Source of the DNA: Malacoraja senta
Taxonomy: Eukaryota
DNA length: 64,000 bases
Direction: 5' to 3'
Assembly: GCA_038087875.1 (NCBI GenBank)
Contig: CM075998.1
Coordinates: forward strand, 2,294,001-2,358,000
The position numbers and the translations under genes are program-made. This document shows positions 7,861-50,800 of the stretch, piece after piece; within the stretch, counting starts at the first letter, position 1; each line of letters opens with the position of its first letter. Under the pieces are notes generated by a model. It worked only from the letters and a program-made list of their open reading frames with translations, was not told the origin of the DNA and ran no database searches.

Positions 7861-8683
7861 TTGGAGAAGGATGGGGAAGAATCAATGGAACTAACACTGA
7901 GGTAACCAGGGCTACCCTGATTGTATACAACATTTGTAATTAATCCTATTGGTCATGTTGAGCGATGGCAGAGGGTGGTAAGAGGAAAGTAGACTTGCCT
8001 TTTGCTATCTACAACCCATTCCAGGTAATCACATCTGGGACAGTATGGCCAAGCTTGAATATTTTGGTTTTAATTTTCCTTCGGTTTGGGGGCTTTCGTT
8101 GGTTTTCATTGTTGTTGGTCAAAATTACATATTGGGAAAACTTCAGTCAAGGGATGTATTAGATTTTGGTTCCAATACATTGGTCATCGGAACCACAGAT
8201 ACATATTCCAAGATAAATTATTATTTTTTAATTTAGCACCTTTTAGCAGGTCACCAGTGCATCCCACAACCAAGTAAGATTGTGTGATATTCCATGGGCT
8301 TATTTTAAAAGACATTTTTGGTGCTCTTATAAAGCAGAGTGAATGATATGTAGTTTCTGCTTTTTTTTTTAAATGTTCATTGCAGCATGGCGTTTTATTG
8401 GTGCAAAAAAATGAATAAAACAATTTTTCCATGGTGGCTTTTGGAATGTTTTTATTTTTGTATTTTTTGCTGTTAATTTTATACCATTCACAGTGAACAG
8501 TTTTGTATAACCGGTTCAGAACATCTGGTGCCTTTAGGCAGCATTAAGATGGGCGAGAGAGGAGGAAAAATAAGCAATGGGGGGCTCTATTTTTTTTTTA
8601 AATGGCCATACCGAGCAGCTTATTAACTGATGAGCGAGCTGAAATTCCTCTTTGCTAAAGAAATTTGTTTATGTTTTGTCCAG

Positions 8684-8835
8684 TGTGTGCAGGCACGGAA
8701 AACAAGCTGAGTTCACTCTCTGGCCAAGAACAGCAGTACCAGCAGCTGCTGAAGATGTACACCGACTGTGAGATAGTGATGGGCAACTTGGAGATCACTA
8801 ACATTTTTGCCAATCGAAACCTCACCTTCCTCAAG
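8684..8835 (+). CDS. ERBB3: exon 2 ([51 protein letters not shown]), L1 domain
   Basis: ccag|TG ... AAG|gtaag, 152 nt. Confidence 0.95.
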
Positions 8836-29800: not shown

Positions 29801-32800
29801 TTGGATGCTATGATGCTGTAGATTCTCTCTGGCATAATAATCAGAATAGACTTGCAAGCCTGTACCCACTCTATGCCATTGGCAATGTTCAGGACTCAGT
29901 TCTTTAAGGATACCCTAACTTGTGTGGATGGCACACTCTGACAGAAGAGTCCCACGTCTAATTAACACTAAAAGCTGAAGATGGGCAAAGCGATAGGGCC
30001 CCCTTGAACACTTCTTCTCAAACTGCATGGGCATTGTAGTATTTAGTGACGTGGAACTTACAGAAATTATTACTCCATTAGCACCACCCTCAGGCTCTTT
30101 GATGCTCTGCAGGATGCACTGTCCAGCATTCATTTTCTACACACAGGCAAACAGCAGAATCTGCAGGATCAGTACTACTTTAATTGTGGGCAGACTAAAT
30201 TGCCTTTGTTTTTTTCTATTTTGGCATTTTCCCTTTTCCTGCTTCTTTCTCTGATGCAGTTTTACAAGTGCGTACAAGATCCCTGACCGTTACAATTTTA
30301 CAAGATCCGTGACCTGACTTTGTGGATCTTTTTAACAAGTGATTACTGCTTTGGTTGGGACTAGTTAACTTGGCAAATAATTATTTAAAGGGAAAGAGAA
30401 TTTGCATTTGATAGCACCTTTCATGCCCTTGAGATAGTCCAGATGCTTTAAACCCAACTAAATGCTTTCTGAGTGTGGTTATTATTGCAGGGCACCTGTT
30501 CTGTGCAGAGCAAACTTCCAGATCCAGTGTGATCGTTAATCAGATAATAATCTGTTTCAGCGATGCTGATTGAGGATTAAACATTGGCCCTAGGACAATG
30601 GAGAAAGCTCCCTGCTCATCCTCAAAACAGAACTTTGGAGAAGACACAGGGTTTCAGTTTAATGTCAGAACATTGCACCTGTTCAGGAGAGTGATACCTC
30701 TAATAGAGCAGCACTCCCTCAGCGCTGCAGGAGTGTCAGCCTGGTAATGTGCTCGTCTCTGGAATAAAACAGCCCTTCAGGGAATTTGGGGAATGCTGAT
30801 GTGGAAAGTTTACTGGTAAGCAGCAGCACCACCTTTTGTGCTTCTGCCTGTAAACTTGCTCTGAAATATTGCCCGTTAGTGTGCTAACTGCAGATTCCAG
30901 AGGGCTTTAGCTCTGAACTCGAGTTCTGGGAAAACCACTATCCAGTGCATTTCCTCAAATGTCCCCTTTCTTTGTCTGCACAGCATGCGAAGGGACTGGG
31001 ACTGGAGCTGGCAATCGATACCAGACTGTGGATTCAAACAATATTGACCAGTTCATTAACTGCACCAAGATCACCGGCAACCTTGACTTTCTCATCACTG
31101 GTCTCGAAGGGTAAGAAAGCACTGTCAATTCCTTTGGATGGGAATGCCAGGCAGTGCAATACTGGGAACATTGTGGAACCCCAGTGGCTGTAGAGGGAAT
31201 GGAGGATGTTTGGTTGTATGCATCATCCATCTCAGCAATGTAGCAAACTATAGGTGGTGGCATAGGGGATGCACAGAAAAAGGGGTGAAGAAAAGATTGT
31301 CAGTAAAGCTAGAACCACTCCCAGGAGGACACAAAGTGCTGGAGTAACTCAGTGGGTTAAGCAACATCTCTGAAGAATATGGATAGGTGACATTTTGGGT
31401 CAGGACCCTTTAGACTGATTGGACCACTCCCATCCTGTGCAAATCTTGGTTTATGTTTTTCACCTTCAAGGACTTGGGAACATGGTAGCTTTTTCAGGTT
31501 GATTGGTGGATATTATGGAGGAGAGCTGAATGGTACGGATGAGTGTTTCTCTCACCAAATTGCATCGTCCAGCAGCAGTACCCTCCCAGTTGTCTTTGGT
31601 TGCAAACTCAGAATTATCCCAACACAGAAGGTAGTTATTTGGCTTATTTGGTCTACATCAGTTCCTTGTAAACTATTACAATCAGTCCAATACCCCCACT
31701 CTTTCCCAGTAGCCTTACGAATCACTTTAATTCCCTTTTTGAATGCTGTGATTGGCTCTGTTTCCACCACTCCTACAGGCAGTGTGTTCCAGATCATAGC
31801 CACACTGCATAAAGAAAAATATTTTCCTTATGTCCTCATTTCACTTTGATTCTGTGGCCCTGGAACCATTGCAGTAAATCTTTTCTGCATCCTTTCTGGG
31901 AACTTCCCACCCGTCCTAAAATATATGACCAGAATTGGCAGTAATACTCTGGTTGTGCCCTAATCAGCCAGTTAACCAGCCAGTTAAATAACCAGGTCAG
32001 TTGTGACCAACCACTAAGCTGGCTGTAGTCAAACCCGAGGTCTTTGGTTTGTCTCTTACCAACCAAGTAATTCAGTTAGCCCTGTCTTCTTTCTGAGTCA
32101 TGCTTCATGTTGAGGAACCATTTCCAACATCTCTCGTGAAAAAGGCTGCACTTCTGAGTTTTGATATTGTTCATGCACAATGTGGAATTAGCTCAATTGA
32201 ATGCTGCCCTCTTTCTACAAGCTTTTAGCTTGTCTGAATACAAAAGTCTTGTTATATTTGAGATTTGACAGCAGGGAGTTACTTCAATATGTAATTATCC
32301 CAGAGTGGTTTAAGATTTATTTTTTTTCCAAGTGCTTTTGCTGTTTAATTACTTGGCTTCAAAGGCTTGGATGAGATTTTTAGATTTTCCAATTCAATTT
32401 TTTCCTTTCCTTTCTATTTGGTTTTAGGGACCCGTACCACAAAATTGCACGTCTAGATCCAGAAAGGCTGAAGATATTTCAAACAGTCCAGGAGATAACA
32501 GGTATGCACCTTATGATTAAAGTTCTGATATGTGACCTGGTAGATTAATCCAAAAATAAGGGGTCTCTAAAGTTCAAAACCATTCTAGATTATTTTGTTT
32601 TGGGGATCTGCCTAAGTGCTATTAGATTGATACCAATATTTGGTGTATCTCCACCCCCAGCCTATTCAGGTACTGGCCGAAAGGATGTGGAGAATGTGAT
32701 AGAAGTGCTGCTTTGCCTTAGATTAATCCAGATCCTGCAGAGTTTAAGTGCTGCCCATGTCGCCTGTTCCAGATGCATTGCCCCGATAGTGTACAACTGA

Positions 32801-35800
32801 TGCTAGGCGCAGGCCTATGAATGGAGATTACTGGGAATTGAATACCCAATTAATACAGTGAGGCTTAAAGGGTCTAGGCTCAAAGTATTGCTGAGTGCCT
32901 TCAGACATCCGAAGTGGAGGAAAATGTGGTAATAGTGGAGGTAATGTTTACCCACAGGTCTTTCTTGTACATGTCTCTGCTCTGTTCAAGGAGAATACTG
33001 ACAGAGATGCAACTTCCCTGAATTCTCAACAGCAAGAGAGGGTTGAAAGAAAAAGTCTTGCATTCTCCACCATTTGGAATAATCCCAGGCAAAAAGAAAG
33101 TCAAATCACCTGTACAGGTGCTGCAACAATGTGGAGTGTTTGAGAGTGTGGCCTGTTCGCCGTTGTTTCGAATCACATGTGCGTTCTTTCCATTTCCAGG
33201 TTACTTGAATATTCAGTCCTGGCCAGAAAGCCTGAAGAATTTAAGTGTCTTTTCCAATCTGACTACTATTGGAGGAAGGACGCTCTACATGTAAGCACTC
33301 TAAAATGAAAGGCTAGTTAACCTGTGCTTGAGAAGTGGAGGGCTGTGGCGGGTAGCTTCCGCCACCTGGTTGTTGAGGGTGCATGTCAGTCATGAATCCT
33401 GTGGCTCCGACTGGAAGCAGGTCGTCATTTGTGGCTATCAGGTTAGGACCAAATGGGCTCTGTTCATGTGTCCTTTCTCCACTTCCCCTCACACAGTCCA
33501 CCCTGCATCCCCCACCTCGCCACCAGTCACTAAAGTCCGGCTTGGGTGAAACACTGATTTATATGGATCGTAGTTTTGCTCTAAGCCGTAGGAGAGGTGG
33601 GAGTGGGGTGACAGGGCAGAGAAACGGTAGTGTGCGGCAAACCGCCAATGCGTCAGAGCACAGGAACGTGGCTTTGAGATTGGAATCTCCTCCACAGCCA
33701 GATCCTGGTTAGCGCTGCTTTGTGTGAGTAGCGTGGGAAGGAATGCGCAAAGTCGAATGGGGACCCACTGGAACTGAGCCTAAGTACCATGACTTCTCAC
33801 TCTGCCCCTTTGTGTGTCTCTATGTAGCCGTGGCCTGTCTCTGATGATCATGAAGCTTCCGCACGTGACATCTCTTGGATTTCAATCACTGATGGAAATC
33901 GGCGCTGGGAGGGTGTATGTGGCCTTCAATAAGCAGCTCTGCTACTACAACACCCTGAACTGGACTGTGCTGTACCGCCAGAAGACTCCCGCCCCTCCTC
34001 CCATCATCAAAGAAAACAAGCAAGGGAGACTGTGCAGTGAGTGAGCTTGGATAACGGGTATGGAAGTGGGATGTGGGTAAAGGAAGACAATGGTGGTGGG
34101 GGGGAACGGGGTTGGGGATGCGTTCTCTCTCTAGCACGACAACAACAACTTGCATTTATCTAGCACCTTTAATGTGATAACGTGTCACAGGAGCGATAAT
34201 CAGACATACCTGGATACCCTGCCACGTATTGTGTCCAGGCCATTCAAAATACGGTCAAAAGGATAAACTTTACAGAGAGACAGAAAGGAGAATTCCAGCC
34301 TTGGGGCCTTCATGATTGTCAGGACAGCCGCCATTGTTTGGGTAGCAGAGGACAGGAATTGAGCAGAGTAACAATGAGATGTACTGCAACATGGTTTCCA
34401 TCACTGGATTTAAGGGCAACTGGTGAGGACATTGCAGATATTTTAGTCATGACTTTACAAAGTTTACTTTGTTTGGGAACTGTTCCCTTTAGATCGAAAA
34501 ATTGTAAGTGTCATTCTGCTATTCGGGAAAAGTGAGTGTCGGAAACCAGGGAATTAAGGGCCAGTTAACCTAACAGCTCTTGGGACATTCTGAGCATCTA
34601 CAAGAAAGAGAGTGACAGAACTACTTGAAATTTTTCATTTGATCAAAGAGAGCAAGTATCGACTTATAAAGCATTGATCAACTACCAAATCTGAAATGAA
34701 TTTTGTGTGGGGGTTACTAAGGCAGAAGGGGATGTCACTTTATGTGGACTTCCAAAAGCCATTTGATAAGATTCTTTATAAGAAACTAAAAGTTGAAGCT
34801 CGTGGAATAGAATGGCCAATTATTGACGAGGCTGGAAAATTGCCTGAGGGGTAGGGATGAAAGGCAGGTACTCACATTGTTAGGATGTGACCAGTAATGG
34901 CCCAGATGGATCTGTCTGTTTACAGATGAGGCACAACTTGGATGCTGCAGCAGTTTCAGCAGGGAAGTGAATGAGGGAAGGAAATCTCCATCTGTTCAAT
35001 TGGTGGGGAAGTCCCTCTATCCTTACAGAAAGCACTGTTTAGTGCCACCTCCATCAACTGGTCTCCCTCCTGTCTTCATTGCTTATCCTGCAGTTGGCCT
35101 TTGGAGTTGCTGTGATTTTTCCAAATTCCACTGGGTAGACCCTCATTTTTCCCCTTGATCTTTTATTTGTCTCGTGGATGTTCTTGAGATTGGAAAACAA
35201 TAGTTGTGTCCATTGCTGAAGTTGCTTCACAGAGATGAACTAGGTTTAAATCTGCCGCATATTTGTACTGATTTTGTGTTTTCTTTCTCCTCCTCGTTCC
35301 TTCATTTTTCCACAGGGAACGAAAAGAAGGTGTGTGATCCCCTGTGTTCCCCTGATGGTTGCTGGGGACCAGGCCCCAGCCAGTGTTTGTCCTGTGCCTT
35401 CTATAGTCGTGGTGGAACCTGTGTGAAAAGCTGCCGATTCCAGGAAGGGTAAGGACTGTAACACTCACTGTATTATTGGTAATCACTTCCTGGAATACAT
35501 TGCTGTTACCCTTAATTCCTTGATCATTCCCCTTCACCTACCTGCGTGAATTGTGGGTTTTAACGCTATGCCTCATGCCATTAAGCATACCCACAGTGTA
35601 CTTGAAGATATGAGACCAATTTACCAATTTAGTAAGAGTTGGGAACATTTTATCTGAAAGGTGTGAGTTTGCTCATGAAAATCACAACAACATGCAGATG
35701 AAATGAAACGAGAAATGCAGGAAACACTCAGCGGGTCAGGCAGCATCTGTGGAAAGAGAAACAGAGTTATTGTTTTTGGTCGAAGATCCTTCATCGGAAC

Positions 35801-38800
35801 TTTCACCTGAAATTTGTCTCGTATGTCAGGAGCTTCTGGTCACTCTGCTCTCAGCTTGTGACCTGGCTCTGCCATTGCACGAACCTAACATGCAAAGCAT
35901 TTCATTTCAAATTTAATTTGAATCCTCCTCCACCGCTTCACATTCTCGGAATTATTTGTAAGTACAAGAGCTGTTGTAGTACAGGGAACTGTGGCGCCGT
36001 CTTACATACAGCAAGAATCCACAAACAGCAGTGAGCTGAAAGATAAGGTAATACACTGTTCTGTGGGAAGGATGAGGGATCCATCCTTCATGGATGCAGG
36101 ACACGAGGCCATTGAGCTTCAGATAGACTCAAAGGGATCTGAACGACTGGACAGGCCATGATCTCGTCTGAAAGACACCAGGGAGTGGCAACAATAAATA
36201 GCAGAGATATGTTTAAGGGAAAGCTGAACACATGAGGGAGGAAAGAATAGGAGATGGTGATAGAAGGGGAGTGGTGACGTCTGGTGGGAGGAGGCTGTTT
36301 TGGGACAGACATCCTACTGTAGTGCATGGCCTCTTTTTGGGCAGCAGATTCTTTGTGAAGGCAGACTTGTTTGAAGTCAGAAGGATACCCACCCCTCTTA
36401 TTCTGCCCCCCTGTCCTGGTCATCTATAATTCATCCTGTTTTGCAGTAGTTGGAGAGAGCTGTTGGCTAGGTTGGTCAAGGCAAGGACCCTCGGTTGTGC
36501 AAAGGAATTCATTGTTTCTGGGGCAATGGACCGGTTTCCAGCCCTGCTTTCACCCAGTATGATACTATGAACGTACATATGAATTCAGAGCAGGAGTCAG
36601 CCACTCAACCCCAAGAGCCTGCTCCACTATTCAATAAGGTCATGCATCATCTGAATAAGCTCAACACCGTGTTCCGGTCTACTACCCCTTTTCCCCTTTT
36701 ACTTATCAACAATATGTTCATGAATACTGCAGGCTGATATGAAGATCAAAGGTGACAATCCAGAATATAGCCTGCTGCAGGAAGAGTTGGGAGGTGTGCA
36801 GAATCAGCACGTACTCTTTTGTTCTCTTCACAGATCCCAGCGAGAGTATGCTGATGGCTCCACGTGCATGCTATGTCACCCAGAGTGCAGGAAGATCAAG
36901 GGAGGACCCACCTGCAATGGAACGGTAAGGGGAAAACATGAAGTGCAACTGACTAGAAATGTTTCAATCTTCTACTTTCAGTTGCTCCTTACACCTAGCC
37001 ATCTCTCTTTCCTCCTTTAAGATGTTCCTTAAAACTCATCTCTTTGATCAAGCTTTTGGTTATCTATGGAAACAGGAGTAGGCAATTTGGCCTCTTGTGC
37101 CTGCTCTCCCATTCAATAAGATTGTGGCTGATCAAAGACCTCAATGCTACATTCCTGCACAAAGCCAAAATCCCTTGATAATGGTCTTGTGAAGCCCCCG
37201 GGGTATTTTTTACCATGTTATAAAGAAAATGTAGAACTGCAAATTGTTGTCATCATTATTGGCCAAGAATAGTAATGATTGGCTTCCTCCAAGACCGTGG
37301 CCTTTATTCTTTTATTGCTACTTACCAGGTAGGACATTAATAATCAACACTTTACTGACAGTGTGGCTTCATTTTGGCACCCACCCAGAGTGACGACTGG
37401 GCGAGGGCAGGGATACTATTGTACCTATCAGCCTCTGGCACACTTCAATCAACAGCCATGACTGCTGTGAGCAGATGAACCACAAGGCTGCACCAAGTGC
37501 TTGATATTAAACAAGGAGAAAATGTCCCTGTTTTTCAATGTAATTACAAAAATAAATTGCTGTCTATTCTGCTACCTGAATTGAAAAGATTTGGAAGAAT
37601 AATAAATTAAATCAGGAAGTTGCAGTGAATGAATATGAAACCTTGATTGTAAATTGTAAGAGAAAGGGAGACTAAGGAAATGAAGGTTTTGCGTTATTTG
37701 GGGAAAATAAAGCACTGAGCCTTGATTGCAGAATAGTGGGGGTGGAGATAATTGTTGAACAAAATTGATGTTTTGCTTAATCCATCCTCGTCCGTTTCTC
37801 CATACTCTTAGGGACCTGCTCACTGCTTTCGATGTGCTCATTACAAAGATGGACCCAACTGTGTGCAGAAATGCCCGGAAGGAATCCAGGGAGAGTGGGG
37901 TCTCATCTTCAAATACCCAGACAAGAACAAAGAATGCAAGCCCTGCCATGAGAACTGCACACAGGGGTAGGTGCAAAGAACTCTAACCTTTGAAATGTGT
38001 CAAATATACCGATCGTTTTTCTTTCTTTGCACTTTTGCCTAGCAGTAGAGTGTGGCGTACTGGAAGGATTCGCAAGCTGATTAACAGTCTTCTGCGATGG
38101 TGTGCGTATTACTTTTGTATCATTGGACTCTTCAGATGAGAACAGTTTGGTTTTAGTTTAGAGATACAGCATGGAATCTGGTCCTTTGGCTTGCAGAGTC
38201 CACACTAGTTCTATGTTATCCCAGTTTCTCATCCATTCCCTACACACTTGGGGCAATTTACAGAGGGGGCCAATTAACCCACAAACCAGCACGTCATTGG
38301 GATGTGGGAGGAAACCGGAGCAGCCGGAGAAAACCCACACGGTCACAGGGAGAACGTGCAAGCTCCACACAAACAGCACCCGAGGTCGGGATGGAACCCA
38401 TATGTCTGGTGCTGTGAGGCAACGGCTCTTCCAGCTGCACCATTGTGCTGCCCAATAGAGGAAGGTTCTGTGGGGTGAGTAACAGTCTGACAGGTTGTAA
38501 TCCCATGGGTGTGAATGTTTTTTTAACCACTCAGTGTTGTGAAGCAGCGGTGTAGGGTGTTTATGGGGACAGTTTTTTCTGGACTCTCAACCCATACAAT
38601 GGGGTTAGAGGGGGGAGCGCAACCTCCTTGTTGAATAAGCTGACCCACCTCCTCCCATTCTCCACCTGAAGGTCAGAAATCGCTCAAGTCTAGTTATTAT
38701 ACAACGACCCCTGTTCGAAGTATCTACCTTGGACATTGAGTCAACTGAATCAGCTAACTCCATTGCCTCATGAAGCCAAAGAACTGGGCTGAACTCAAGT

Positions 38801-41800
38801 GTTGAAGCTCCTACATAAATAATGGGCACCTGGACTCATAGAATGGTGGTCCTACAAAGTCCCAATGCTGGGGAGAACCAAACCCCTGAAGTGAATGATA
38901 CAACAGACAGAAAGTTTGCATTTGGTAATGCTGCCTTGACTTTGTGCCACAGCATGGTGAGGACAAGGGTTGTGATCTCCAACAGCCAGGAGCAGGTAGA
39001 GAGCAAAACTATGTTATGTTGCAGCTGTATAAAGATTGTTTAGACCGCACTTGGAGTATTTCGTACAGTTCTGTTCATCACACTACAGGACTGGCATAAT
39101 TGTTTGCATAGGCGAGGGGGGACGAAGGGTCGGTTTCTCTGCTATATGTTTCTATATAGCAGACAAACCTCTCCTGGGCAGACAATGGCAAGTTAGATCC
39201 CCGCACAGCTAGACGAAGATTGTCAAGTTTGAGTTTTTTTATCCAATGAGCAACAAAGAGGTAATGCTCGAGTGCGATCTGTTGATGCAGACGCAATGCA
39301 CTGTGGGTGTCTGTCCAGGATCTGAATTGAGGACAAAGGGCTTAATTAGGAAAGGGAAAATAGATTATGAAAGGAAACTGGCAGGGAACATAAAAACTGA
39401 CTGCAAAAGTTTTTATAGATATGTGAAGAGAAAGAGATTAGTTAAAACAAATGTAGGTCCCTTGCAGTCATAAACAGGTGAATTGATCATGGGGAACAAG
39501 GATATGGCGGACCAATTGAATAACTACTTTGGTTCCGTCTTCACTAAGGAAGACATAAATAATCTGCCGGAAATAGCAGGGGGCCGCGGGTCAAAGGAGA
39601 TGGAGGAAATGAGTGAAATCCAGGTTAGTCGGGAAGTGGTGTTGGGTAAATTGAATGGATTAAAGGCCGATAAATCACCAGGGCCAGATAGGCTGTATCC
39701 CAGAGTACTTAAGGAAGTAGCTCCAGAAATAGTGGATGCATTAGTGATAATTTTTCAAAACTCTTTAGATTCTGGAGTAGTTCCTGAGGATTGGAGGGTA
39801 GCAAACGTAACCCCACTTTTTAAGAAGGGAGGGAGAGAGAAAACGGGGAATTACAGACCAGTTAGTCTAACATCGGTAGTGGGGAAACTGCTAGAGTCAG
39901 TTATTAAAGATGGGATAGCAGCACATTTGGAAAGTGGTGAAATCATTGGACAAAGTCAGCATGGATTTACGAAAGGTAAATCGTGTCTGACGAATCTTAT
40001 CGAATTTTTCGAGGATGTAACTAGTAGAGTGGATAGGGGAGAACCAGTGGATGTGTTGTATCTGGACTTTCAGAAGGCTTTCGACAAGGTACCACATAAG
40101 AGATTAGGATACAAACTTAAATCACACGGTATTGGGGGTTCAGTATTGATGTGGATAGAGAACTGGCTGGCAAACAGGAAGCAAAGAGTAGGAGTAAACG
40201 GGTCCTTTTCACAATGGCAGGCAGTGACTAGTGGGGTACCGCAAGGCTCAGTGCTGGGACCCCAGCTATTTACAATTTATATTAATGATCTGGATGAGGG
40301 AATTGAAAGCAACATCTCCAAGTTTGCGGATGACACTAAGCTGGGGGGCAGTGTTAGCTCTGAGGAGGATGCTAGGAGACTGCAAGGTGACTTGGATAGG
40401 CTGGGTGAGTGGGCAAATGTTTGGCAGATGCAGTATAATGTGGATAAATGTGAGGTTATCCACTTTGGTGCCAAAAACGGGAAGGCAGACTATTATCTAA
40501 ATGGTGGCCGATTAGGAAATGGGGAGATGCAGCGAGACCTGGGTGTCATGGTACACCAGTCATTGAAAGTAGGCATGCAGGTGCAGCAAGCAGTGAAGAA
40601 AGCAAATGGTATGTTGGCCTTCATAGCAAGAGGATTTGAGTATAGGAGCAGGGAGGTTCTACTGCAGTTGTACAGGGTCTTGGTGAGACCACACCTGGAG
40701 TATTGCATACAGTTTTGGTCTCCAAATCTGAGGAAGGACATTATAGCCATAGAGGGAGTGCAGAGAAGGTTCACCAGACTGATTCCTGGGATGTCAGGAC
40801 TTTCATATGAAGAAAGACTGGATAGACTTGGCTTATACTCGCTAGAATTTAGGAGATTGAGAGGGGATCTTATAGAAACGTACAAAATTCTTATGGGGTT
40901 GGACAGGCTAGATGCAGGAAGATTGTTCCCGATGTTGGGGAAGTCCAGGACAAGGGGTCACAGCTTAAGGATAAGGGGGAAATCCTTTAAGACCGAGATG
41001 AGGAAAAACTTTTTCACACAGAGAGTGGTGAATCTCTGGAACTCTCTGCCACAGAGGGTAGTTGAGGCCAGTTCATTGGCTATATTTAAGAGGGAGTTAG
41101 ATGTGGCCCTTGTGGCTAAGGGGATCAGGGGATATGGAGAGAAGGCAGGTACAGGATACTGAGTTGGATGATCAGCCATGATCATACTGAATGGCGGTGC
41201 AGGCTCGAAGGGCCGAATGGCCTACTCCTGCACCTATTTTCTATGTTTCTATGTTTCTATGATGTTGCTAACCAGGTTGTCACTTCCTTGCCAAGAACTG
41301 CTTTGTGATTTTTAACTTGTTTTCTTTTGTGTTGCCATGACACTAGGTGCCGAGGTTCTGATGCAGCGGATTGTGGTGAAGTTGTGCATAGGTACCATTG
41401 ACGGTCTGCGTGTGTGCATGCCTCCTTATGACCTTTCTCTTATTCTGATTATAATACAGGTGTAAGGGTCCCACTGGGCTGGATTGCTCTCGCTATCCTT
41501 GGATGGCCCCCATCAAAGCATTACACAATAGGTAACATCCTCTCCCCACCACCCCTTCAAATTAGAGCTGTGACATGCAAGTGCAACATGAGATCTATGT
41601 GGGGAAGGAGGCAGAATCAATCAGGGGGTTTCACCTTTTGTTTTGAACAGTAATTGTGAGCATCCCCTGTCTGGTGGTTTGTGTTGTTGAAAAGGCTGTG
41701 TGCATCCAACAGCGGTGTTACAAGTAATTTGTCGTGGACGGTATTGCAATGCAGGATTGATGGTCTTGGTCTCCTGTTATGCGTGCCAGCCATTATTCAG

Positions 41801-44800
41801 CTCATCTGCAATTAGTGGAACTAAATAAAAACTGAATGCTGGAAATACTCAGCACATCGGGCAGAATATGTGGGAAGAGATACAGAGTTAGCCTTTCAAG
41901 TCAATGGCGCCTTCATCAGCATCTGGTACTTAATTCCATCCATCAGAATGGAATTAAATTAGAAGGTGCAATATACAATACCTGATACTGTCTGATTTGG
42001 TACCTTGCCTGAATTGAATCCCTACTGCTTTTAATCCCTGATTGTGCTCTCATTAAATGGGCTCCTACCTTTGGTATTTGGAATTGAGCTATTGGGAGGG
42101 ATAGGAGTGGATTGCTGGGAATCAACTGGTGTTCCCACGATGCAAATGTTGGCAGTGGAGAACTGCACAGGATACTATCTCTGGCCATCCAATCCAGTGG
42201 CACTCCTGGTCTCAGCTTGCCCGTTACAAATGCATGGCTTGCACTAATCAAATTGAACCCAGCAATGACCCCCAGGAGAAGAAGGGACAGAACAGAAAAG
42301 AAAGACAGAAACCAGCTTGCTGGTGACATGAAATAGGTCAAATTGTCTGGGAAGCATTTGGAGGAAAACAATGTGAAATGGACAGACCGAGATAACTTGT
42401 GTGTCTCATTGCAGTGATATTGGATCCATGGTGTAAGTGTGCTCTAAATTGACAACTGGGGTATAACGTTTTAGTACAGTAAGAAAAGCTGTTCTGTGTT
42501 TGTGCTGAAAATACAGGGTCCTGGGAAGGCTATTGAGTACTGTCAGGGAGTCCAGAATTACAGGTTAGCTGCCCCGAGGTGTAAAAGGAAAATACTGGTA
42601 GACTGCAGGATGTGAAATACTGGACTAGGTCCCAGTCTGATCTTTATGTTGTACTCCATGTCATGGCACTTGTTATGTATCACCCCTGTTGATCAGGGTA
42701 CCACGGAAATATCTATTTATTTTTTAATACTGTATTGAAATGAACAGGCACTCAATTACATCATCTGCTTCCACCAGCCCTATGTCCCAGAGTTGTGATG
42801 CTCCTTGTGTGTCTTTATCAATGCTTTCATTGGCCACTGTTTTGATCACCGCACAATAACATCCATTCCCATCAGCACTTTGATCCTGCTTTGACTGCTG
42901 TTGTTTGCGCCTCCTGAAAGACCTCACCTGTAAGAAGTCTTCAACCACTGATTTTGTAGAACATATTTTGGTCAGAATTGGTTGCAGTGGAGGCTGCTCA
43001 GATGCTCAGTTGCAGAATGCACAGATGTTACTGAGCACCATGGCATCCCTCCCCGCCTCACCATTTGATCCTGGACGATCTCCACCCAGATGGGAGAACT
43101 TGGAAGGAAAAATGTGATTCTAAAGTATTTTTGTCAATTTTAAACACTGACCATGATTTCATTTGAAACCAGAGTTCTTTACAGATGAGGTATTTCTGAC
43201 TTCACATATAGGGTGACTGTGAATCGTACCTTTCAAAGAGTGTACTGTTGGATATGAATTAATGATTAAGGGTGGCAACGTGGCTGTATTGCACCAGGTG
43301 TAAGTCTTTCAACTCGGTCAAAGGCAGAATGCAGCAAATTGCTACTGCTCTTGTCACAGGATGTCGGTGTGTGCACACGATTCCCCTTGCACCAAAGGTG
43401 CTATTTTATTAAATAAGTAATGTCATTTTCCCAGAGGAAGGCACAAAGGAGGCCAATCGACCCATCCTCTTCTGTCACATTAACTTTGCATAGCAGCATT
43501 GGCAACGGCCCAGCCTTCTCATTCATTTGATGGGGAAGCTTGAATTCTCCCCCTTCTCCGTTGCCTGGATGTAAATGGAGATATAATGCAGCAACCATGT
43601 TGCAATCTGCAGTTCATCCACCCTTAACCATGCCTATGAAATCTTGAGTGTTTTGCATGTTGAATGAAACTGATGGCTTTGCTGAAGACATAATTCTTAT
43701 TCCCCTCTCCTGTTACAGCGTCACTGGTTCAAATCATTTCATTGCCAGTGGAAAAATCGCCACCACTCAGAGCCTTGCTCACATTGTTACAGATACATTT
43801 TAGAATGAATTGCAAGATATTGCTTATTATTGTTAGAGCGCATTTGTGGAAAACTGGTTGGGTTTTGGAAGAAGACTGACCACAAACCTTTACATAAAGA
43901 TGGGCAGTATTTTAATTCTTCAGTTCAGCCATTTAACCTTCAGGGGTCTCTGCATCACATCAATTTAGGTCAATCCCAGATGTAATTGCTCCATCATTGG
44001 CAGCCATGCCTCAGCTGCCTGGGCCCTAAGATTTGGAACTCCTTCCTGAAACTCTTCCACCTCTCTTTCCTCCTTTAAACTGCTTTTAAGGCCAAGCTTT
44101 GTGCAATCTCTCAGACAACTGCCCCAATAATCTCCTGAGGGTCGATGATTACTTTGGCAACTTCCTCAGAACATTTTGCTCTTTTTAAGGAACTGTATAA
44201 ATGCAAATTGTTACTGTTGTTATTTTAAAAAGAAAAAGATGGAGTGTGCCAGGAAATGGCTTTATCTTTTTGTTAAAATTCTGCAGCCTGTTTTCTGCGA
44301 AATAGGAACTCAAATACCCAGAAATATATGCAAATCAGGCTGCCCTAATTTTGAATGAACTTAATTTTGTTGAATATCATTCTGAAAAATCAAGACCATG
44401 CTCAGTTACACTCCTATGCAGCACCTTGGTTTTACTGTATTAAAGGAACTGCATAAATGCAGGTTATATAGTTGTGTCATAAATAGTACGGTATTTTAAA
44501 TGTTAAAGAGGGAAACAACCAGCAGAATGACCATGTTTTTTCATAACCAGGATCGAAAACAAAAGTATAAACGATGATGATAAATGCAATCTGAAGAGAG
44601 ACCCAGAAATTAAATGGATTAATTTACAAATAAAGTCCAAAGATTATAGGGATAATACTAATTTGAGGGTTGTAAAGCAATGGGGATATAGCAGGGATTA
44701 CGTGGTAGCTCTTGCAGAAAGCTGGGTGGCACAGACTCTGTGTCCCCCTTCATTTCTAGAACGCTTTATGGGGTAGAATTTTGATTTTGGCTGATAGCAC

Positions 44801-47800
44801 ACTGGTCTAAGTGTTGTTCAGGAAGAATAGAAGGAGCTTTACACTGTTTTGGTCGTAATGTGCCAGACCTGATAATGGTTGATGCCTCAACAGCTCCAAT
44901 CTCCATTATTGTGACAATTTAAATATTCCCACCCGACAAGGAAGAATAAACTGACAGATCCAGATCAAACTCAATTTCTTCAGCAAAGTTTTCTGTTCCC
45001 TTCAGTTGGGGAATTCCAACTTGTTGAATTCTCTGTGTACTGTTTGCTGTGTGTCTGAATCCTGATGGGTTTTTCTTCATGCTTCATTTTGTTTTCCCCA
45101 GAGCTTTAAAGAACACATTTAATCAATTTAATTAAAGTCTTTCACTCCACACGTTTCCTGCCTGTGGCAGGGATTGCAGTGATGTGGGAATAACATTTCA
45201 GAGCATTTATATTTGCTCTCTCTCTCTCCCATGCGCGCATTCATCCAATGCACATTATCTTTCCTGTGCGTGCGCTCGCCCCTTCCCCCTCCCCCTCCCT
45301 CTCCCTCTCCCGCATGCCCGCCCTCCCTCTCCCTCTCCCGCATGCCCGCCCTCTCTCTCCCTCCCTTTCTCATACGTGCCTGCACTTCCCCTCTCCCCCT
45401 CTCCCTCACTCTCTAGCTCCCGCTCTCGTGCGTGCCCTCCCTCGTGTTCACTCGTGCAAGCATGCTTTCTTTCAGAATCGCTCCTCTTCAATGACCAATA
45501 GCCAGCTGACAGTCAAAGTAAATTGCTCCCTTTGTGCATTGGAGTGCCATAGACACAGCATTGAACTATGCTGCACAGATCCATTTTGCGAATTCTAATC
45601 TGCACATTTGTTTGGCAGTACAATTGGGGTGACCTTTAAAGCTCTGATGTAGCTAATCCTGTTCGAACCACTGTGTAGATTTTATTATTTTAAGAAGGAA
45701 AGGAATGACCTTGCCATATTGCGTGAGGCAAAACCTGCCTTGACTTGTATTAATTTGAATCTAGACAAATCCCTCAGATTGTTGCAGCAGTTGTTGGAGG
45801 ACTGATGGCTGTGATGCTTGTGGTGCTGCTGGCTGTCGTTTACTGGAGAAGGCAGATCATTCGGAAAAAGAGGGCAATGCGGCGATATCTGGAGACAGAG
45901 GTGAGATGGTCGTCCTAGATGGACAGTGTCAAGAGCGTGAGGTTGCTTTTAGTGACGTTATTGTGAGCTCCACTGAATCTGCTGTGAGGAAGAAACTCGC
46001 AAAAGAGTGTTGACCAATTTTGGGTCTCTGGAGCCTTGATTTTTCGACATGCAACCAAATCCTATCAATAACATCAAACACCATTACCATCAGGATAACA
46101 CATTGCGTTTGTGATTTTGTTTCCTTTCATTAGATGCTTGATCCCCTTGATCCCAGCGCCGACTCACCCAATCAGGTGAACACACGGATTCTGAAGGAGA
46201 CGGAGCTGCGGAAAGTTAAGGTGCTGGGGTCTGGAGTATTCGGAACAGTGTACAAGGTTAGTGGGCATAGGTCACTGCAGGATAATGTTGACCTGCAACT
46301 CTGCCTTTTTGTAAACCAGCATCTGCAGTTTCTTGTTTCTACAATCTGCCTTTTTTGAGTCTTTTAATGTCACAATTCTTGCATACTGCTGTTAGTCCAA
46401 TGTTAATTAAGACTGCTGGATTCTAACCATTACTTGAGGTCTACGGTTGAGGTCTAAGGTTGAGGAACCATGGTTGAGGTCTAAGGTTATCTGATGCTAA
46501 ACAGATCCAAACAAAGTCTCTTTCAAACTGACCTTGTTATTGGGATTGATCATGATGTGCTGTTGCAGTCAATTGGAATGTGTAAGTAGAAAGACTAGTG
46601 GCACCTCTCAGGATGTCCTAAAGTATATGAGCATTTTTAAAGTGTAGACACTATTATGATGCAGGAAATATGGCAAGGAATTTTCTTGCTCAATATTTTT
46701 TTGCATCCACTTGGGAGATCCCCAATATGCCTTATCTGGAAGAGACTGCAACACTCCCTTGACATTGAGCAGTAGTGACAGCCTGGCTTATTGTGCTCAA
46801 GAGTCTGGAGTGGGTCTTAAACCGACCACTGACAGACTCCGAGGACTGAGTACTGCCCATTGAACCTCAGCTAGCGCACAATAGTGCAATGTGACCTCTT
46901 ACACAAAAAGGAGTTCTATTATGAATGACTTTATATAAGACGCAGTGGGGCAAAATAATGTCAGCACATAAATGATGGGAGAATAAAACCAGGTACTCAA
47001 TTATCAATATAAATGTTTCGATTTATCGGGAAGAAATTGTGATACACTGGAAAAAGCTTTGGTGATAGGAAGTGAGGTGAATGAATGAGATCAATGAGAT
47101 GAAGATTGAGAGACTACTCTGTGCTGAGCCGAGCCAGATCCAATGCTCATGTGAGTCCACCTTAGTTATTTTTATTCCTGATGACCTGATAAGATTTCTG
47201 TTCCTAGGGTCTCTGGATCCCTGAGGGTGAGTCCGTAAAGATTCCAGTGGCCATCAAGGTCTTACAGGAGGAGCATTGCTCTGAGACTTCAAGGACTGTG
47301 AATGAGGTAAACCTGCCATTTTTAAAAATAATTCAAAGGATATAGATGTGGTTGTCAATCTTTTATTTCTTGTCTATTTCTAATAGCCCCTGAACTGAGA
47401 GGGAAAGTGTAAATCGCTATGGCCAAGATATTAAGGGGAAATTCTCCTGTTCTTCTTTGAAGAGGGACTTTTCTAATCCACTGAATGGCAGATGGAGCAA
47501 CTCAGATGAGTTTAGCTCTTATTTGGAGTCACATATAGGCCCAGACTAGGCAAGAATGTCTTTGCCTGATGGAATTTGGTGAACCAGATAGGATTCTGGG
47601 ACTGAGAATGATTTGTGTTGATGGTAATGGTATTGACTGAATTTGTCCTTCATTCCTTGCCTTCCCATTGATGGTCTGTGGACTTGAACAACTAGTGGAG
47701 AAAATAGCTCACAAATTATCCCTGTATCTCACCATGGAAAAGGCTTACTGTTGGTTCATGCTGTACTTTGTATTTCATGTTACCTTGTATTTACAGGAGA

Positions 47801-50800
47801 TGTTGATGGTGGGCAGTCTGGATCACCATCATGTCCTGCGACTTCTTGGAATCTGCCCCGGAGCCCCACTCCAGATAGTCACACAGCTCCTGCCACTTGG
47901 CTCTCTCCTTGAGTACCTCCACAAGAACAAGGATAACATCCAGTCCCAAAAGCTTCTCAACTGGTGTGTTCAGATTGCCAAGGTACGTGGGACCTTGTGT
48001 CTATGCTCCTATGCGTCAAGTCAAGTCACTTTTATTTATATAGCACATTTAAAAAACAACTCTCGTTGGCCAAAGTGCTTTACATTGGTGGAGGTACTAA
48101 CGTTATACAACAGTGGTTCATAGATTAAATACATACATCACTATATACATATAGCCCTCGCTCAGAGGACGTCAAGAAAGGCTTGGGAGTAGAGATGAGT
48201 TTTAAGTCTCGACTTAAAGGAGTTGATGGAGGGGGCAGTTCTGATGGGAAGAGGGATGCTGTTCCACAGTCTAGGAGCTGCAACCGCAAAGGCGCGGTCA
48301 CCCCTGAGCTTATGCCTAGACCGCGGGATGTTCAGTAACCCCAAGTCGGCCGATCTGAGGGACCTGGAGGTGGAGTGGTGGGTAAGCAGACTTTTGATGT
48401 AGGTGGGGGCAAGCCCATTAAGGGCTTTGTAGACATAAAGGAGGATCTTGAAATTTATTCGGAACCGCACAGGAACCACTCATGCTTGGCATGAGTCAAA
48501 CATTCTGTATAGCTTTATTGAAGATCAGGTGCTAGTGAGCCCTTGGTGGGGAGAACTTCTCTAAATGGACTCTTGGGATGATACTTATCGTTGCTTATGT
48601 CCGAGTTAAATACATTTACATTGTTACCACAGGGTATGAGATACCTGGAGGAGAAGAAGATGATTCATCGGAACCTGGCTGCCAGAAATGTACTTGTGAA
48701 ATCACCTAGTCATGTTCAGATCACGGACTTTGGCATCACCAACCTCTTGGCATTAGATGAGAAAAAGTATTTCTTTGATGAAGTTAAGGTTTGTCATTTT
48801 TCTTGGTTAAGTTTTCTACTAAGCAGAAAATATTAAGTTACTAATTCCACAAATGTTGGTTTTGATACGTCGGGGAAGTGGGAATTAATTAATTGATAAT
48901 ATTTGAAGAGAAAATTATTTTCATTCCTAACCCCATGCAGACCAAGAAAATCCCAGGTTTGATTCCCCCAGTAACTGCTAGGTCAGTCAGTAATATTGGA
49001 GGCATTACAAATGGTCTCAGTCATTCAGGTTTCTGCTCCCAAAGATAGAGATGCATTCCGAACACAGGCAATGTTTCAGAAGAAGGGAAGTTATTGGAAA
49101 AGGACAATGAATATATTCACGAAATGAGAATCTCTTTTGTGATGACGTTTCAAAAGTACAAAAGAAAAAGATTGTTTCTTTCCCAATCAATCAAATGAAA
49201 GGTCGAAACCCAAAATGTCACCTATCCATGTTTCCCCAGAAGTGCTGCCTGACCCGCTGAGTTACTCCAGCACTTTGTATCTACAAAAGAAAGGGCGAGT
49301 CAGTTCCTTGATCCTGATCTGTTATTCAATAAGATCGTGGCTGATCCCCCATCTCAACTGCACTCTTGTTGTTCTGTCAGAAAAGACCTGAAAAGATAAT
49401 TTTGTTTTATTTTTACAAAAAGCAACTGCAAGACGTACAACACTTGTCCACAAATTTGTACAACTGGTTTTGCGCAAATAGTCATGAGTGAAGGTACACA
49501 AAAATGCTGGAGAAACTCAGCGGGTGCAGCAGCATCTATGGAGCGAAGGAAATAGGCAATGTTTCGGGCCGAACCCCTTCTTCAGACTGATAGGGGGTGG
49601 GGAGAAGAAAGGAAAAAAGGAAAAAAGGCGGAGGAGGAGCCCGAGGGCTGGGGGATGGGAGGAGACAACCAGAGGGCTGATGAAGGGGAGGGGACAGCAA
49701 GGGCCAGCAGAATTTGGAGAATTCAATGTTCATGCCCCCAGGATGTAGACTGCCCAAGCGGAATATGAGGTGCATTTCCTCCAATTTCCGGTGTTGCTCG
49801 CTGTGGCCATGGAGGAGACCCAGGACAGAGAGGTCAGATATGGAATGGGAGGGGGAGTTGAAGTGCTGAGCCACTGGGAGGTCAGGTTGGTTAATGCGGA
49901 CCGAGCGGAGGTGTTCGGCGAAACGATCGCCAAGCCTCCGCTTGGTCTCACCGATGTAGATCAGCTGACATCTAGAGCAGCGGATGCAATAGATGAGGTT
50001 GGAGGAGATGCAGGTGAACCTCTGTCGCACCTGGAACGACTGCTTAGGTCCTTGAATGGAGTCGAGGGGGGAGGTGAAGGGACAAGTGTTGCATCTCTTG
50101 CGGTTGCAAGGGAAAGTACCCGGGGAGGGGGTGGTACGGGAGGGAAGGGAAGAATTGACAAGGGAGTTACGGAGGGAGCGGTCTTTGCGGAAGGCAGACA
50201 TGGGGGGAGATGGGAAGATGTGGTGAGTGGTGGGGTCACGTTGGAGGTGGCGAAACTGAGTGAAGAGCTGCTCGCCCGTTGCCCTTCATCCCTGCTATTA
50301 AACCAATGTCCTGTCAATTTATTCAATTGGGTGTTAAAGATCTCATTTATTAATTAAAGACAGGGTGGGGAATTCCCCCAAAGTTCAACAAACCAGTCAA
50401 TAGGCCATTCATCTCATCAGCAATTGCAGCATCCTGCTGTGCGCAAATAGGCAGCTACCATTACCTACAGAGCAATAGTCACTACTGCACATTAACATTT
50501 ATGTGGAACTGTCTTATTTTTCTGTTCAAGGAGGAACTGCAGATGCTGGAAAATCGAAGGTAGACAAAAGTGCTGGAGAAACTCAGCGGGTGAGGCAGCA
50601 TCTATGGAGCGAAGGAAATAGGCAACGTTTTTGGCCGAAACCCTTCTTCAGACTGATGTAGGGTGGGGGGGGGGGGCAGGAAGAAGAAAGGCAGAGTAGC
50701 CCTTGCTGTCTCCTCCCCTTCTCAGCACTCCCTCAGCCCTCTGGCTCCTCCTCTTCCTTTCTTCTTCCTGCCCCCCCCCCCCACCCTACATCAGTCTGAA

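What the first reader, a model, noticed from the sequence alone, without database searches (positions are those of the whole stretch)
41347..41531. ERBB4-type JM-b/JM-a alternative juxtamembrane exon pair in an ERBB3 gene
Seen: between exon 15 and the TM exon lie two separate exons, 45 nt ([15 protein letters not shown]) and 72 nt ([24 protein letters not shown]). Each has its own polypyrimidine/AG and GT site, both are phase 2-2 and multiples of 3, and both supply the same last two domain IV cysteines. Neither appears in the ORF track. Established: ERBB4 has a short JM-b exon (CIGSSIEDCIGLMDR) followed by JM-a ([25 protein letters not shown]). Only JM-a is shed by ADAM17 and then cut by gamma-secretase to release a nuclear intracellular domain. 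Mammalian ERBB3 has a single such exon. Inference: the JM switch predates the ERBB3/ERBB4 duplication and survives in chondrichthyan ERBB3, which may produce cleavable and non-cleavable pseudokinase isoforms. The basic [13 protein letters not shown] stretch is a candidate NLS. I know of no description of this.
Basis: partly seen in the sequence, partly recalled or inferred. Interest (0 to 1): 0.9.

Follow-up and report, generated by a model that had tools for sequence, protein, structure and literature searches.

The report
ERBB4-style juxtamembrane exon switch in skate ERBB3
A skate's ERBB3 growth-factor-receptor gene carries two interchangeable mini-exons just outside the membrane, the same short/long switch known only from its sister gene ERBB4; the switch is real, used in transcripts, and old, but public gene models already include it and its function is untested.

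Summary
The 45-nt exon (41347-41391) and the 72-nt exon (41460-41531) lie between exon 15 and the transmembrane exon. Both have AG/GT sites, are phase 2-2, and encode a C-x7-C loop. They are the only 2 of 5,185 candidate segments in the window that fit the motif.

The gene is ERBB3, from a skate. It has an HRN catalytic loop, and in two trees it groups with bony-vertebrate ERBB3 at 100/100 support, apart from ERBB4.

Both exons are used. An intron-less cDNA contig from a closely related skate splices exon 15 to the 45-nt exon to the TM exon. RefSeq, Ensembl and UniProt hold both the short (15 aa) and the long (24 aa) form in 10 cartilaginous fishes. None of 46 models contains both exons.

The intron between them is only 56-70 nt in four genomes and is conserved. 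That is at or below the ~50-nt steric limit, which likely enforces mutual exclusion.

The long exon clearly matches ERBB4 JM-a (YPW motif). The short exon matches JM-b in size, order and position only. Coelacanth ERBB3 also has two forms, so the switch probably predates the ERBB3/ERBB4 split.

Differential shedding is inferred, not shown. No paper describing this was found.

The parts
8681..62907 (+). ERBB3 gene, exons 2-28 (coding sequence ends at about 61932, the rest is 3' UTR). Exon 1 lies upstream of the window.
   Evidence: tblastn with shark and ray orthologues. blastn of skate cDNA contig L002 shows 95-100% nt identity per exon. Junctions refined to GT/AG.
37812..37966 (+). Exon 15 (155 nt), the end of extracellular domain IV (..[11 protein letters not shown]). 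Its donor leaves GG for the next codon.
41347..41391 (+). Alternative exon 16a, JM-b-like. 45 nt, 15 codons ([15 protein letters not shown]). It leaves a stalk of 6 residues after the last Cys. Its donor (TAG|gtacca, 5/9 consensus matches) is the weakest of any internal exon in the gene.
   Evidence: Present in cDNA L002 and in X2-type isoforms of 13 species.
41392..41459 (+). 68-nt mini-intron between the two alternative exons. It is conserved across cartilaginous fishes (70, 65 and 56 nt in Leucoraja, Chiloscyllium and Callorhinchus).
41415..41420 (+). TGCATG (RBFOX-type GCAUG), 24 nt downstream of the exon 16a donor. Conserved in skates and a shark; TGCATT in the chimaera.
41442..41450 (+). 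ATTCTGATT, invariant in all four genomes. It is a candidate branch site (CUGAU, A at 41448, 57th nt of the intron). Other candidates are the A's at 41428 and 41431 (37th and 40th nt).
   Evidence: the branch-site role is inferred
41460..41531 (+). Alternative exon 16b, JM-a-like. 72 nt, 24 codons ([24 protein letters not shown]). It leaves a stalk of 15 residues after the last Cys and carries the YPW motif. Donor TAG|gtaaca.
   Evidence: Present in X1-type isoforms of about 20 species.
45765..45900 (+). Exon 17: transmembrane helix plus the basic intracellular juxtamembrane segment ([13 protein letters not shown]).
48633..48788 (+). Kinase exon with the HRNLAARN catalytic loop (Asp to Asn), the ERBB3 hallmark.

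Best explanation
The two stretches are genuine, mutually exclusive cassette exons (16a and 16b) of a skate ERBB3 gene. Each supplies the last disulfide loop (C-x7-C) of domain IV plus the extracellular stalk. The receptor is therefore made in a short-stalk form (15 aa, JM-b-like) and a long-stalk form (24 aa, JM-a-like, with YPW). SHOWN: the exons and their frame; the ERBB3 identity of the gene; conservation of both exons in sharks, rays and chimaera; a full-length transcript from a close relative that uses 16a and skips 16b; paired isoform models in 10 species; no model with both exons; a conserved 56-70-nt intervening intron. INFERRED: (a) Mutual exclusion is enforced sterically. Any branch point at the usual distance from the 16b acceptor lies about 27-40 nt from the 16a donor, and even the most acceptor-proximal candidate lies 44-58 nt away, against a threshold of ~50 nt. 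Probability about 0.6. (b) The choice is tissue-regulated through the conserved intronic elements, including a GCAUG between the exons that would favour 16a and disfavour 16b where RBFOX proteins are present. Probability about 0.4. (c) The pair descends from the same ancestral pair as ERBB4 E15b/E16 and so predates the ERBB3/ERBB4 duplication. Probability about 0.75. (d) The long-stalk form is more accessible to ADAM-type sheddases than the short-stalk form. Probability about 0.3-0.35.
For: Anatomy and chance control. Gene identity: HRNLAARN; YMPM and YEYM tail motifs. The quick tree and the careful tree both place the window protein in a cartilaginous-fish clade sister to bony-vertebrate ERBB3 (100/100). 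The ERBB4 clade is separate and has its own shark and skate members. Transcript use: Logan contig L002 (SRR5172151) encodes the complete 1244-aa Leucoraja isoform without introns and aligns exon 15 to 16a to exon 17 on the window. Callorhinchus UniProt V9K829 and RefSeq XP_042201764 carry the short form, and Ensembl-derived entries carry the long form. Isoform pairs differing by exactly 9 aa occur in Narcine, Hypanus, Pristis, Mobula, Amblyraja, Leucoraja, Cetorhinus, Scyliorhinus and Mustelus. Genomic conservation: 45 nt / 56-70 nt / 72 nt in four genomes, with intron blocks as conserved as the exons. Steric threshold of ~50 nt: PMC7969005. Homology to ERBB4: identical 45-nt size and 155-nt exon 15, same order and short intron (PMC2944867). 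ERBB4 JM-b is 15 aa in all 117 gnathostome sequences where the motif was found. Exon 16b scores 55-66 against ERBB4 JM-a and 14-19 against JM-b. Coelacanth ERBB3 has both a YPPW-type form and a short form.
Against: No RNA data exist from the window's own species. RefSeq isoforms are automated models, and I could not inspect their read support. Exon 16a is not assignable to the JM-b type by sequence alone. In skates the conserved CUGAU adenosine lies 56-58 nt from the 16a donor, slightly above the steric threshold, so exclusion may not be purely steric there. The GCAUG is not conserved in the chimaera. The ERBB4 JM-a cleavage region is not conserved in 16b, and a review of gamma-secretase-cleaved RTKs does not mention ERBB3 at all (PMC6756091). 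The genomic order of the two coelacanth exons could not be checked.
Confidence: 0.85

Rival explanations
1. Convergence. The exon pair arose by an independent tandem duplication of exon 16 within the ERBB3 lineage and only resembles the ERBB4 pair.
For: Exon 16a is only weakly and non-specifically similar to ERBB4 JM-b (32-33, against up to 30 for JM-a). No JM-a form was seen among the listed cartilaginous-fish ERBB4 models, so the two paralogues do not visibly carry the full pair in the same lineage.
Against: Exon 16b is far closer to ERBB4 JM-a (55-66) and to the coelacanth ERBB3 long form (78) than to its neighbour 16a (23). Both paralogues share the 45-nt size, the order, the phase and the short intron. 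The YPW motif sits only in the downstream exon in both genes. Independent origin would require all of this twice.
Confidence: 0.12
2. The isoforms are real, but their functional difference is not sheddase susceptibility. They would instead differ in membrane-proximal geometry, glycan/lectin interactions or partner selection, and hence in downstream signalling, as reported for ERBB4 JM-a versus JM-b selective STAT5a/STAT5b activation.
For: PMC9663514 shows that extracellular JM motifs direct STAT choice and surface compartment independently of cleavage. The ERBB4 cleavage region is not conserved in exon 16b. ERBB3 is absent from the review of gamma-secretase-cleaved RTKs.
Against: The 9-residue difference in stalk length mirrors ERBB4 (15 vs 6 residues after the last Cys here; about 16 vs 6 in ERBB4). 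Stalk splicing is reported as a determinant of shedding (abstract of PMC5385562, listed). The two functions are not mutually exclusive.
Confidence: 0.3
3. Exon 16a is a minor or noisy splice product, or an annotation artefact, with no biological role.
For: It has the weakest donor in the gene (5/9). One shark model (GCC19439) omits it although the exon is in that genome.
Against: Its coding capacity, length, both Cys, the Gly-Glu after the second Cys and the split Arg codon are kept from chimaera to skates. Its flanking intron sequence is conserved. A full-length transcript contig was assembled with 16a as the only form.
Confidence: 0.05
4. The gene is really ERBB4 (many RefSeq records call the orthologues 'erbB-4-like'), so the pair would simply be the known ERBB4 switch.
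For: RefSeq names. Several exons look ERBB4-like, for example exon 2 and the ETE after the basic segment.
Against: The HRN loop. Trees at 100/100. The same species have a separate true ERBB4 with HRD and its own JM-b exon. The gene is compact, about 54 kb from exon 2 to the last exon. The tail carries YMPM and YEYM motifs.
Confidence: 0.01

Closest known systems
ERBB4 JM-a / JM-b isoforms (exons E15b and 16)
   Same: Two consecutive small exons lie between the 155-nt exon 15 and the TM exon. The upstream exon is 45 nt and the downstream one 72-75 nt. Both are phase 2-2 and each encodes C-x7-C. YPW occurs only in the long exon. The intervening intron is short and use is mutually exclusive.
   Different: The host gene is ERBB3, with an HRN catalytic loop. 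The intervening intron is 56-70 nt instead of the 121 nt in human ERBB4. No both-exon models were seen, whereas ERBB4 has them in gar, paddlefish and turtles. The mapped ERBB4 cleavage region is not conserved, and shedding is untested.
Tetrapod and teleost ERBB3 exon 16 (single constitutive exon)
   Same: Same position and phase, and the same C-x7-C loop. The peptide is closest to the short coelacanth ERBB3 form (scores 35-55) and closer to ERBB4 JM-b than to the long YPW-type ERBB3 exons.
   Different: There is only one exon, of 19-22 aa. No YPW-type partner was detectable in the turtle introns on either side.
Sterically enforced mutually exclusive exons (alpha-tropomyosin 2/3, alpha-actinin, OGDH 4a/4b)
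   Same: The branch point of the downstream exon lies closer to the upstream exon's donor than the ~50-nt threshold, so the two exons cannot be joined (PMC7969005).
   Different: Here the whole intron is tiny, rather than a distant branch point sitting in a longer intron. Branch points are not mapped, and in skates the most acceptor-proximal candidate (56-58 nt) sits at or just above the threshold.
ERBB2 delta-16 and stalk-splicing control of shedding (e.g. CADM1)
   Same: Alternative use of the small exon that encodes the extracellular juxtamembrane stalk changes receptor behaviour. For CADM1, shedding susceptibility is set by stalk splicing (abstract of PMC5385562, listed). The ERBB2 delta-16 comparison rests on my own knowledge.
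   Different: Those are exon-skipping events, not an exchange of two homologous exons.

Membership tests
ERBB3 orthologue | Groups with ERBB3 of other vertebrates to the exclusion of ERBB4, EGFR and ERBB2 | tested here: met
   Quick tree of 40 rows and careful tree of 24 rows. The cartilaginous-fish clade plus bony-vertebrate ERBB3 has 100/100 support, and ERBB4 forms a separate 100/100 clade that includes skate and shark ERBB4.
ERBB3 orthologue | Catalytic-loop Asp replaced by Asn (HRNLAARN) | tested here: met
   Window 48666 onward. ERBB4 of the same group has HRD.
ERBB3 orthologue | C-terminal YxxM (p85-binding type) motifs | tested here: met
   YMPM and YEYM in the tail. Their number relative to mammalian ERBB3 was not compared.
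Mammalian-type fully degenerate ERBB3 pseudokinase | Loss of the alpha-C helix glutamate (His in mammals) | tested here: not met
   The window has ..[12 protein letters not shown].. where mammalian-type sequences have ..TDHMLAIGSLDH.., so the Glu is retained. This concerns the degree of kinase degeneration, not orthology.
ERBB4-type JM-b/JM-a exon switch | Two adjacent small exons between exon 15 and the TM exon, each with its own splice sites, the same phase, and a length divisible by 3 | tested here: met
ERBB4-type JM-b/JM-a exon switch | Short (45 nt) exon upstream and long (72-75 nt) exon downstream, separated by a short intron | tested here: met
   45 nt / 68 nt / 72 nt here, against 45 / 121 / 75 in human ERBB4. 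The same layout is found in three other genomes.
ERBB4-type JM-b/JM-a exon switch | Sequence homology of each exon to its ERBB4 counterpart | tested here: inconclusive
   The long exon is clearly JM-a-type (scores 55-66 against 14-19). The short exon is ambiguous (32-33 against JM-b, up to 30 against JM-a).
ERBB4-type JM-b/JM-a exon switch | Mutually exclusive use in mRNA | tested here: met
   Shown in orthologues, not in the window's own species. cDNA L002 has 16a without 16b. Isoform pairs exist in 10 species, and none of 46 models has both exons.
ERBB4-type JM-b/JM-a exon switch | Only the long form is shed by ADAM17 and then cut by gamma-secretase | not testable with these tools
   Needs a cell-based shedding assay.
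ERBB4-type JM-b/JM-a exon switch | Tissue-specific isoform ratio | not testable with these tools
   Needs RNA-seq junction counts by tissue.

The most novel reading that the evidence does not exclude
The ancestral neuregulin receptor, before the ERBB3/ERBB4 duplication, already had a cleavable/non-cleavable juxtamembrane switch. In cartilaginous fishes (and perhaps coelacanth) the long-stalk ERBB3 isoform still undergoes ADAM/gamma-secretase processing and releases a kinase-impaired intracellular domain to the nucleus. Tetrapod and teleost ERBB3 kept only the short, JM-b-type exon, which would explain why mammalian ERBB3 is not known as a gamma-secretase substrate.
Probability: 0.2. Interest if true: 0.75.

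Novelty: new member of a known kind. Interest (0 to 1): 0.5.

Why it matters
The JM-a/JM-b switch is treated in the literature as a peculiarity of ERBB4. It decides whether that receptor can signal by regulated intramembrane proteolysis and which STAT5 it activates. Finding the same exon architecture in ERBB3 of cartilaginous fishes, and two JM forms in coelacanth ERBB3, dates the switch to before the ERBB3/ERBB4 split. It also suggests that tetrapod ERBB3 descends from one fixed arm of the switch, and it offers a natural system for asking what the switch did in a receptor with an impaired kinase. The 56-70-nt intervening intron is also a compact candidate example of sterically enforced mutually exclusive splicing. 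The gain is evolutionary and mechanistic context rather than a new kind of system, and the isoforms are already in automated annotation.

Tried and rejected
(1) The representative-library search with a 62-aa kinase exon returned mostly fragments. It was useful only for getting full-length ids.

(2) Genomic DNA could not be fetched for Pristis and Scyliorhinus canicula because the gene range exceeds 100 kb. It could not be fetched for the Pristis X2 isoform or for either coelacanth model because they are not on record. The order of the two coelacanth exons is therefore unknown.

(3) I looked for a relic YPW-type or second C-x7-C exon in the turtle ERBB3 introns flanking exon 16 and found none.

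(4) I looked for JM-a forms of cartilaginous-fish ERBB4. None appeared among the listed cluster members or the JM-a-directed search. Only 15 of 68 cluster members were listed and only cluster representatives were searched, so absence is not shown.

(5) RNA structure as a selector mechanism: the fold of 41320-41560 is no more stable than shuffles (z = +1.1), and there were no Rfam hits in 37000-47000.

(6) Peptide scoring could not assign exon 16a to the JM-b type.

(7) 'Gene is ERBB4' is rejected by the trees. 'Pseudo-exon' is rejected by the cDNA.
Full report
OBSERVATION. The sequence is as described. A 45-nt exon lies at 41347-41391 (ctAG|G TGC ... CAT AG|GTacca). A 72-nt exon lies at 41460-41531 (acAG|G TGT ... 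AAT AG|GTaaca). They sit between exon 15, which ends at 37966 with ..CHENCTQ + GG, and the transmembrane exon, which starts at 45765. Each takes the GG of exon 15 to make Gly. Each encodes a C-x7-C loop. Each ends in AG, which is completed to Arg by the A of the TM exon.

As a chance control I listed every AG..GT-bounded, stop-free, phase-2 segment of 30-120 nt on both strands of the window. Of 5,185 such segments, only these two match C.G.{4}DC. Of the 259 that are exactly 45 nt, only exon A has Cys at positions 1 and 9 and at least 4 identities to ERBB4 JM-b. Spliced ORFs with A, B, neither or both all remain open.

The 45-nt E15b lies 121 nt upstream of the 75-nt exon 16, exon 15 is 155 bp, and the two exons are mutually exclusive (PMC2944867). 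Exon 15 in the window is also 155 nt.

WHAT GENE. Exons 2-28 of one receptor gene span 8681-62907. Exon 1 is upstream of the window. The catalytic loop reads HRNLAARN, and the tail carries YMPM and YEYM. The encoded protein is 98.6% identical to the Amblyraja radiata protein that RefSeq names erbB-3, and 98.3% identical to the Leucoraja protein. The window therefore comes from a skate.

Two maximum-likelihood trees place the window protein inside a cartilaginous-fish clade. One is a quick tree of 40 rows and the other a careful tree of 24 rows. That clade is sister to ERBB3 of coelacanth, teleosts and tetrapods with 100/100 support. ERBB4 forms a separate 100/100 clade that has its own skate and shark members. 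The refuting condition 'the gene is ERBB4' is not met. The RefSeq name 'erbB-4-like' given to most shark and ray orthologues is a misnomer.

ARE BOTH EXONS USED. Cluster look-ups and extraction of the juxtamembrane segment show isoform pairs that differ by exactly 9 residues. One member carries the 24-aa long form ([20 protein letters not shown]). The other carries the 15-aa short form (CRGS/P..ADCGEV/IV/AHR). Such pairs are present in Narcine, Hypanus, Pristis, Mobula birostris, Amblyraja, Leucoraja, Cetorhinus, Scyliorhinus canicula and Mustelus. In Callorhinchus the short form is in UniProt V9K829 and a RefSeq protein, and the long form is in Ensembl-derived entries. The short form is also seen in S. 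torazame, Carcharodon and Hemiscyllium.

Forms lacking both exons exist in Hypanus X3 and in three Callorhinchus entries. None of the 46 models contains both exons.

There is direct transcript evidence. A 6.2-kb Logan assembly contig (SRR5172151, L002) encodes the complete 1244-aa Leucoraja short-form protein with no introns. It aligns to the window exon by exon at 95-100% nucleotide identity and runs exon 15 > 41347-41391 > 45765 onward, skipping the 72-nt exon.

I have no RNA data for the window's own species, and I could not inspect the read support behind the RefSeq models.

GENOMIC ARCHITECTURE AND LIKELY SPLICING MECHANISM. The same layout is present in four genomes. It is 45/68/72 nt in the window, 45/70/72 in Leucoraja (L005), 45/65/72 in the shark Chiloscyllium (L004) and 45/56/72 in the chimaera Callorhinchus (L001). 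In Chiloscyllium the 45-nt exon is present although the deposited gene model omits it.

The mini-intron and the flanking intron sequence are about as conserved as the exons. GTAC at the donor, a (C)GTGT.TGCAT block and ATTCTGATT are shared by all four genomes. TGCATG is kept in skates and shark but reads TGCATT in the chimaera.

Exon 16a has the weakest donor of any internal exon in the gene (5/9 consensus matches), and 16b has 6/9.

A threshold of ~50 nt between a 5' splice site and a branch point has been proposed for simultaneous U1/U2 assembly. It underlies mutually exclusive splicing in tropomyosin, actinin and OGDH (PMC7969005). Here, branch-point candidates at the usual distance from the 16b acceptor (A at 41428 and 41431; the equivalent A in Callorhinchus) lie only about 27-40 nt from the 16a donor. 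The invariant CUGAU adenosine (41448) lies 44 nt away in the chimaera and 54-58 nt away in shark and skates.

I infer, with probability about 0.6, that the mini-intron cannot be excised, or only poorly, which makes the exons mutually exclusive. This fits one contrast. ERBB4 has a 121-nt intron in human, and both-exon models exist in gar, paddlefish and turtles. None was seen for ERBB3.

A GCAUG between the exons lies 24 nt downstream of 16a and 40 nt upstream of 16b. By the usual positional rule for RBFOX proteins (my own knowledge), it would favour 16a and disfavour 16b. That is a hypothesis only.

No stable RNA structure (z = +1.1) and no Rfam family was found.

RELATION TO ERBB4 AND TO OTHER ERBB3 GENES. 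ERBB4 JM-b is 15 aa in all 117 gnathostome sequences where the motif was found, including sharks, rays, gar, bowfin, coelacanth, lungfish, birds and amphibians. ERBB4 JM-a (C.GPT..DC..YPW......L.QHAR) is present in reedfish, sturgeon, paddlefish, gar and tetrapods.

In pairwise scoring the skate 72-nt exon scores:
- 55-66 against ERBB4 JM-a
- 78 against the long coelacanth ERBB3 form
- 14-19 against ERBB4 JM-b
- 23 against its own neighbour

Cross-paralogue, same-type similarity thus exceeds within-gene similarity, which argues for an origin before the ERBB3/ERBB4 duplication. The 45-nt exon is less informative. It scores 32-33 against ERBB4 JM-b and up to 30 against JM-a. Its assignment to the JM-b type rests on its identical length, its upstream position and its short C-terminal tail.

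An unexpected addition concerns the coelacanth. ERBB3 there exists in two model versions with different JM segments. One is a YPPW-type long form (XP_014354429). The other is a 19-aa short form (XP_064408528, H2ZVQ6). Tetrapod and teleost ERBB3 exon-16 peptides score highest against that short form (35-55). They also score higher against ERBB4 JM-b than against the long YPW-type ERBB3 exons.

The pair is therefore probably not confined to cartilaginous fishes, and the single exon 16 of tetrapod ERBB3 may be the JM-b-type arm. I could not obtain coelacanth DNA to check exon order. I found no relic second exon in a turtle locus.

FUNCTION. What is shown is structural. The two isoforms differ in the last disulfide loop and in stalk length (6 versus 15 residues after the last Cys). 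That difference is very similar to ERBB4's.

Differential shedding is an inference from ERBB4. The ERBB4 cleavage region is not conserved, and ERBB3 does not appear in a review of gamma-secretase-cleaved RTKs (PMC6756091). ErbB-3 is reported in the nucleus only as a full-length protein (PMC3418567). An alternative or additional role is suggested by the finding that extracellular JM motifs steer STAT5a/STAT5b choice and surface compartment (PMC9663514).

The basic [13 protein letters not shown] segment is the juxtamembrane tripartite NLS conserved across the EGFR family (PMC3418567). It is not a new feature.

NOVELTY AND VERDICT. Full-text searches found no paper describing JM isoforms of ERBB3 or the evolution of the switch. 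The isoforms are nevertheless already present in RefSeq, Ensembl and UniProt for many species. I rate this a new member of a known kind: the ERBB4 JM switch found in ERBB3. It is of moderate interest to receptor and splicing specialists. The cleavage idea remains to be tested.

The scan's own notes on this stretch, one on the 68-nt mini-intron with an RBFOX site and one on the HRN loop with an intact alpha-C Glu, agree with what I found. I checked the first across four genomes and the second on the window sequence.

Noticed in passing
orthologues of the window gene: RefSeq names the ERBB3 orthologue inconsistently in cartilaginous fishes. It is 'erbB-4-like' or 'erbB-4' in most sharks, rays and Callorhinchus, 'erbB-3a' in Hypanus, Mobula and Carcharodon, and 'erbB-3' only in Amblyraja. 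The trees place all of them in ERBB3.
   Followed up: yes
Latimeria ERBB3 proteins P0011 versus P0311/P0312: Two annotation versions of coelacanth ERBB3 use different juxtamembrane exons. One is a YPPW-type 26-aa form and the other a tetrapod-like 19-aa form. This implies that both exons exist in that genome. Their order and any alternative use are unknown.
   Followed up: partly
cartilaginous-fish ERBB4 models: All listed shark and ray ERBB4 isoforms carry JM-b or skip the exon. No JM-a form was seen, although bichir, sturgeon, gar and tetrapods have one. The listing is incomplete, so absence is not established.
   Followed up: partly
ERBB4 of gar, paddlefish and turtles: Some ERBB4 models contain JM-b and JM-a in tandem (both exons included). 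No such model was seen for ERBB3.
   Followed up: no
window 47208-47982 (exons 19-20): The alpha-C helix glutamate is retained (..[12 protein letters not shown]..) although the catalytic loop is HRN, so the kinase is less degenerate than mammalian ERBB3. This matches the scan's note s1-200048.
   Followed up: partly
window 6150-7466 (-) and 49539-50285 (-): Intronic retroelement remnants. One ORF has a weak reverse-transcriptase match (RVT_1, E = 0.009) and another a weak GIY-YIG match (E = 4.5e-4). Both are below the Pfam cut-offs, and together they suggest Penelope-like elements. The 4-8 kb region is also G+C-rich with strong GC skew.
   Followed up: partly
L004 38152-38196 (Chiloscyllium punctatum): The 45-nt exon is intact in this shark genome but missing from the deposited gene model GCC19439, which uses only the long exon.
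   Followed up: yes
Petromyzon S4RBI1 (P0129): A lamprey ERBB-family model has an odd juxtamembrane segment (EIGERHKGAPYWANVNK) without the Cys pair. This is possibly a mis-called acceptor in a JM-a-like exon. Its place in the tree is uncertain because of a long branch.
   Followed up: no
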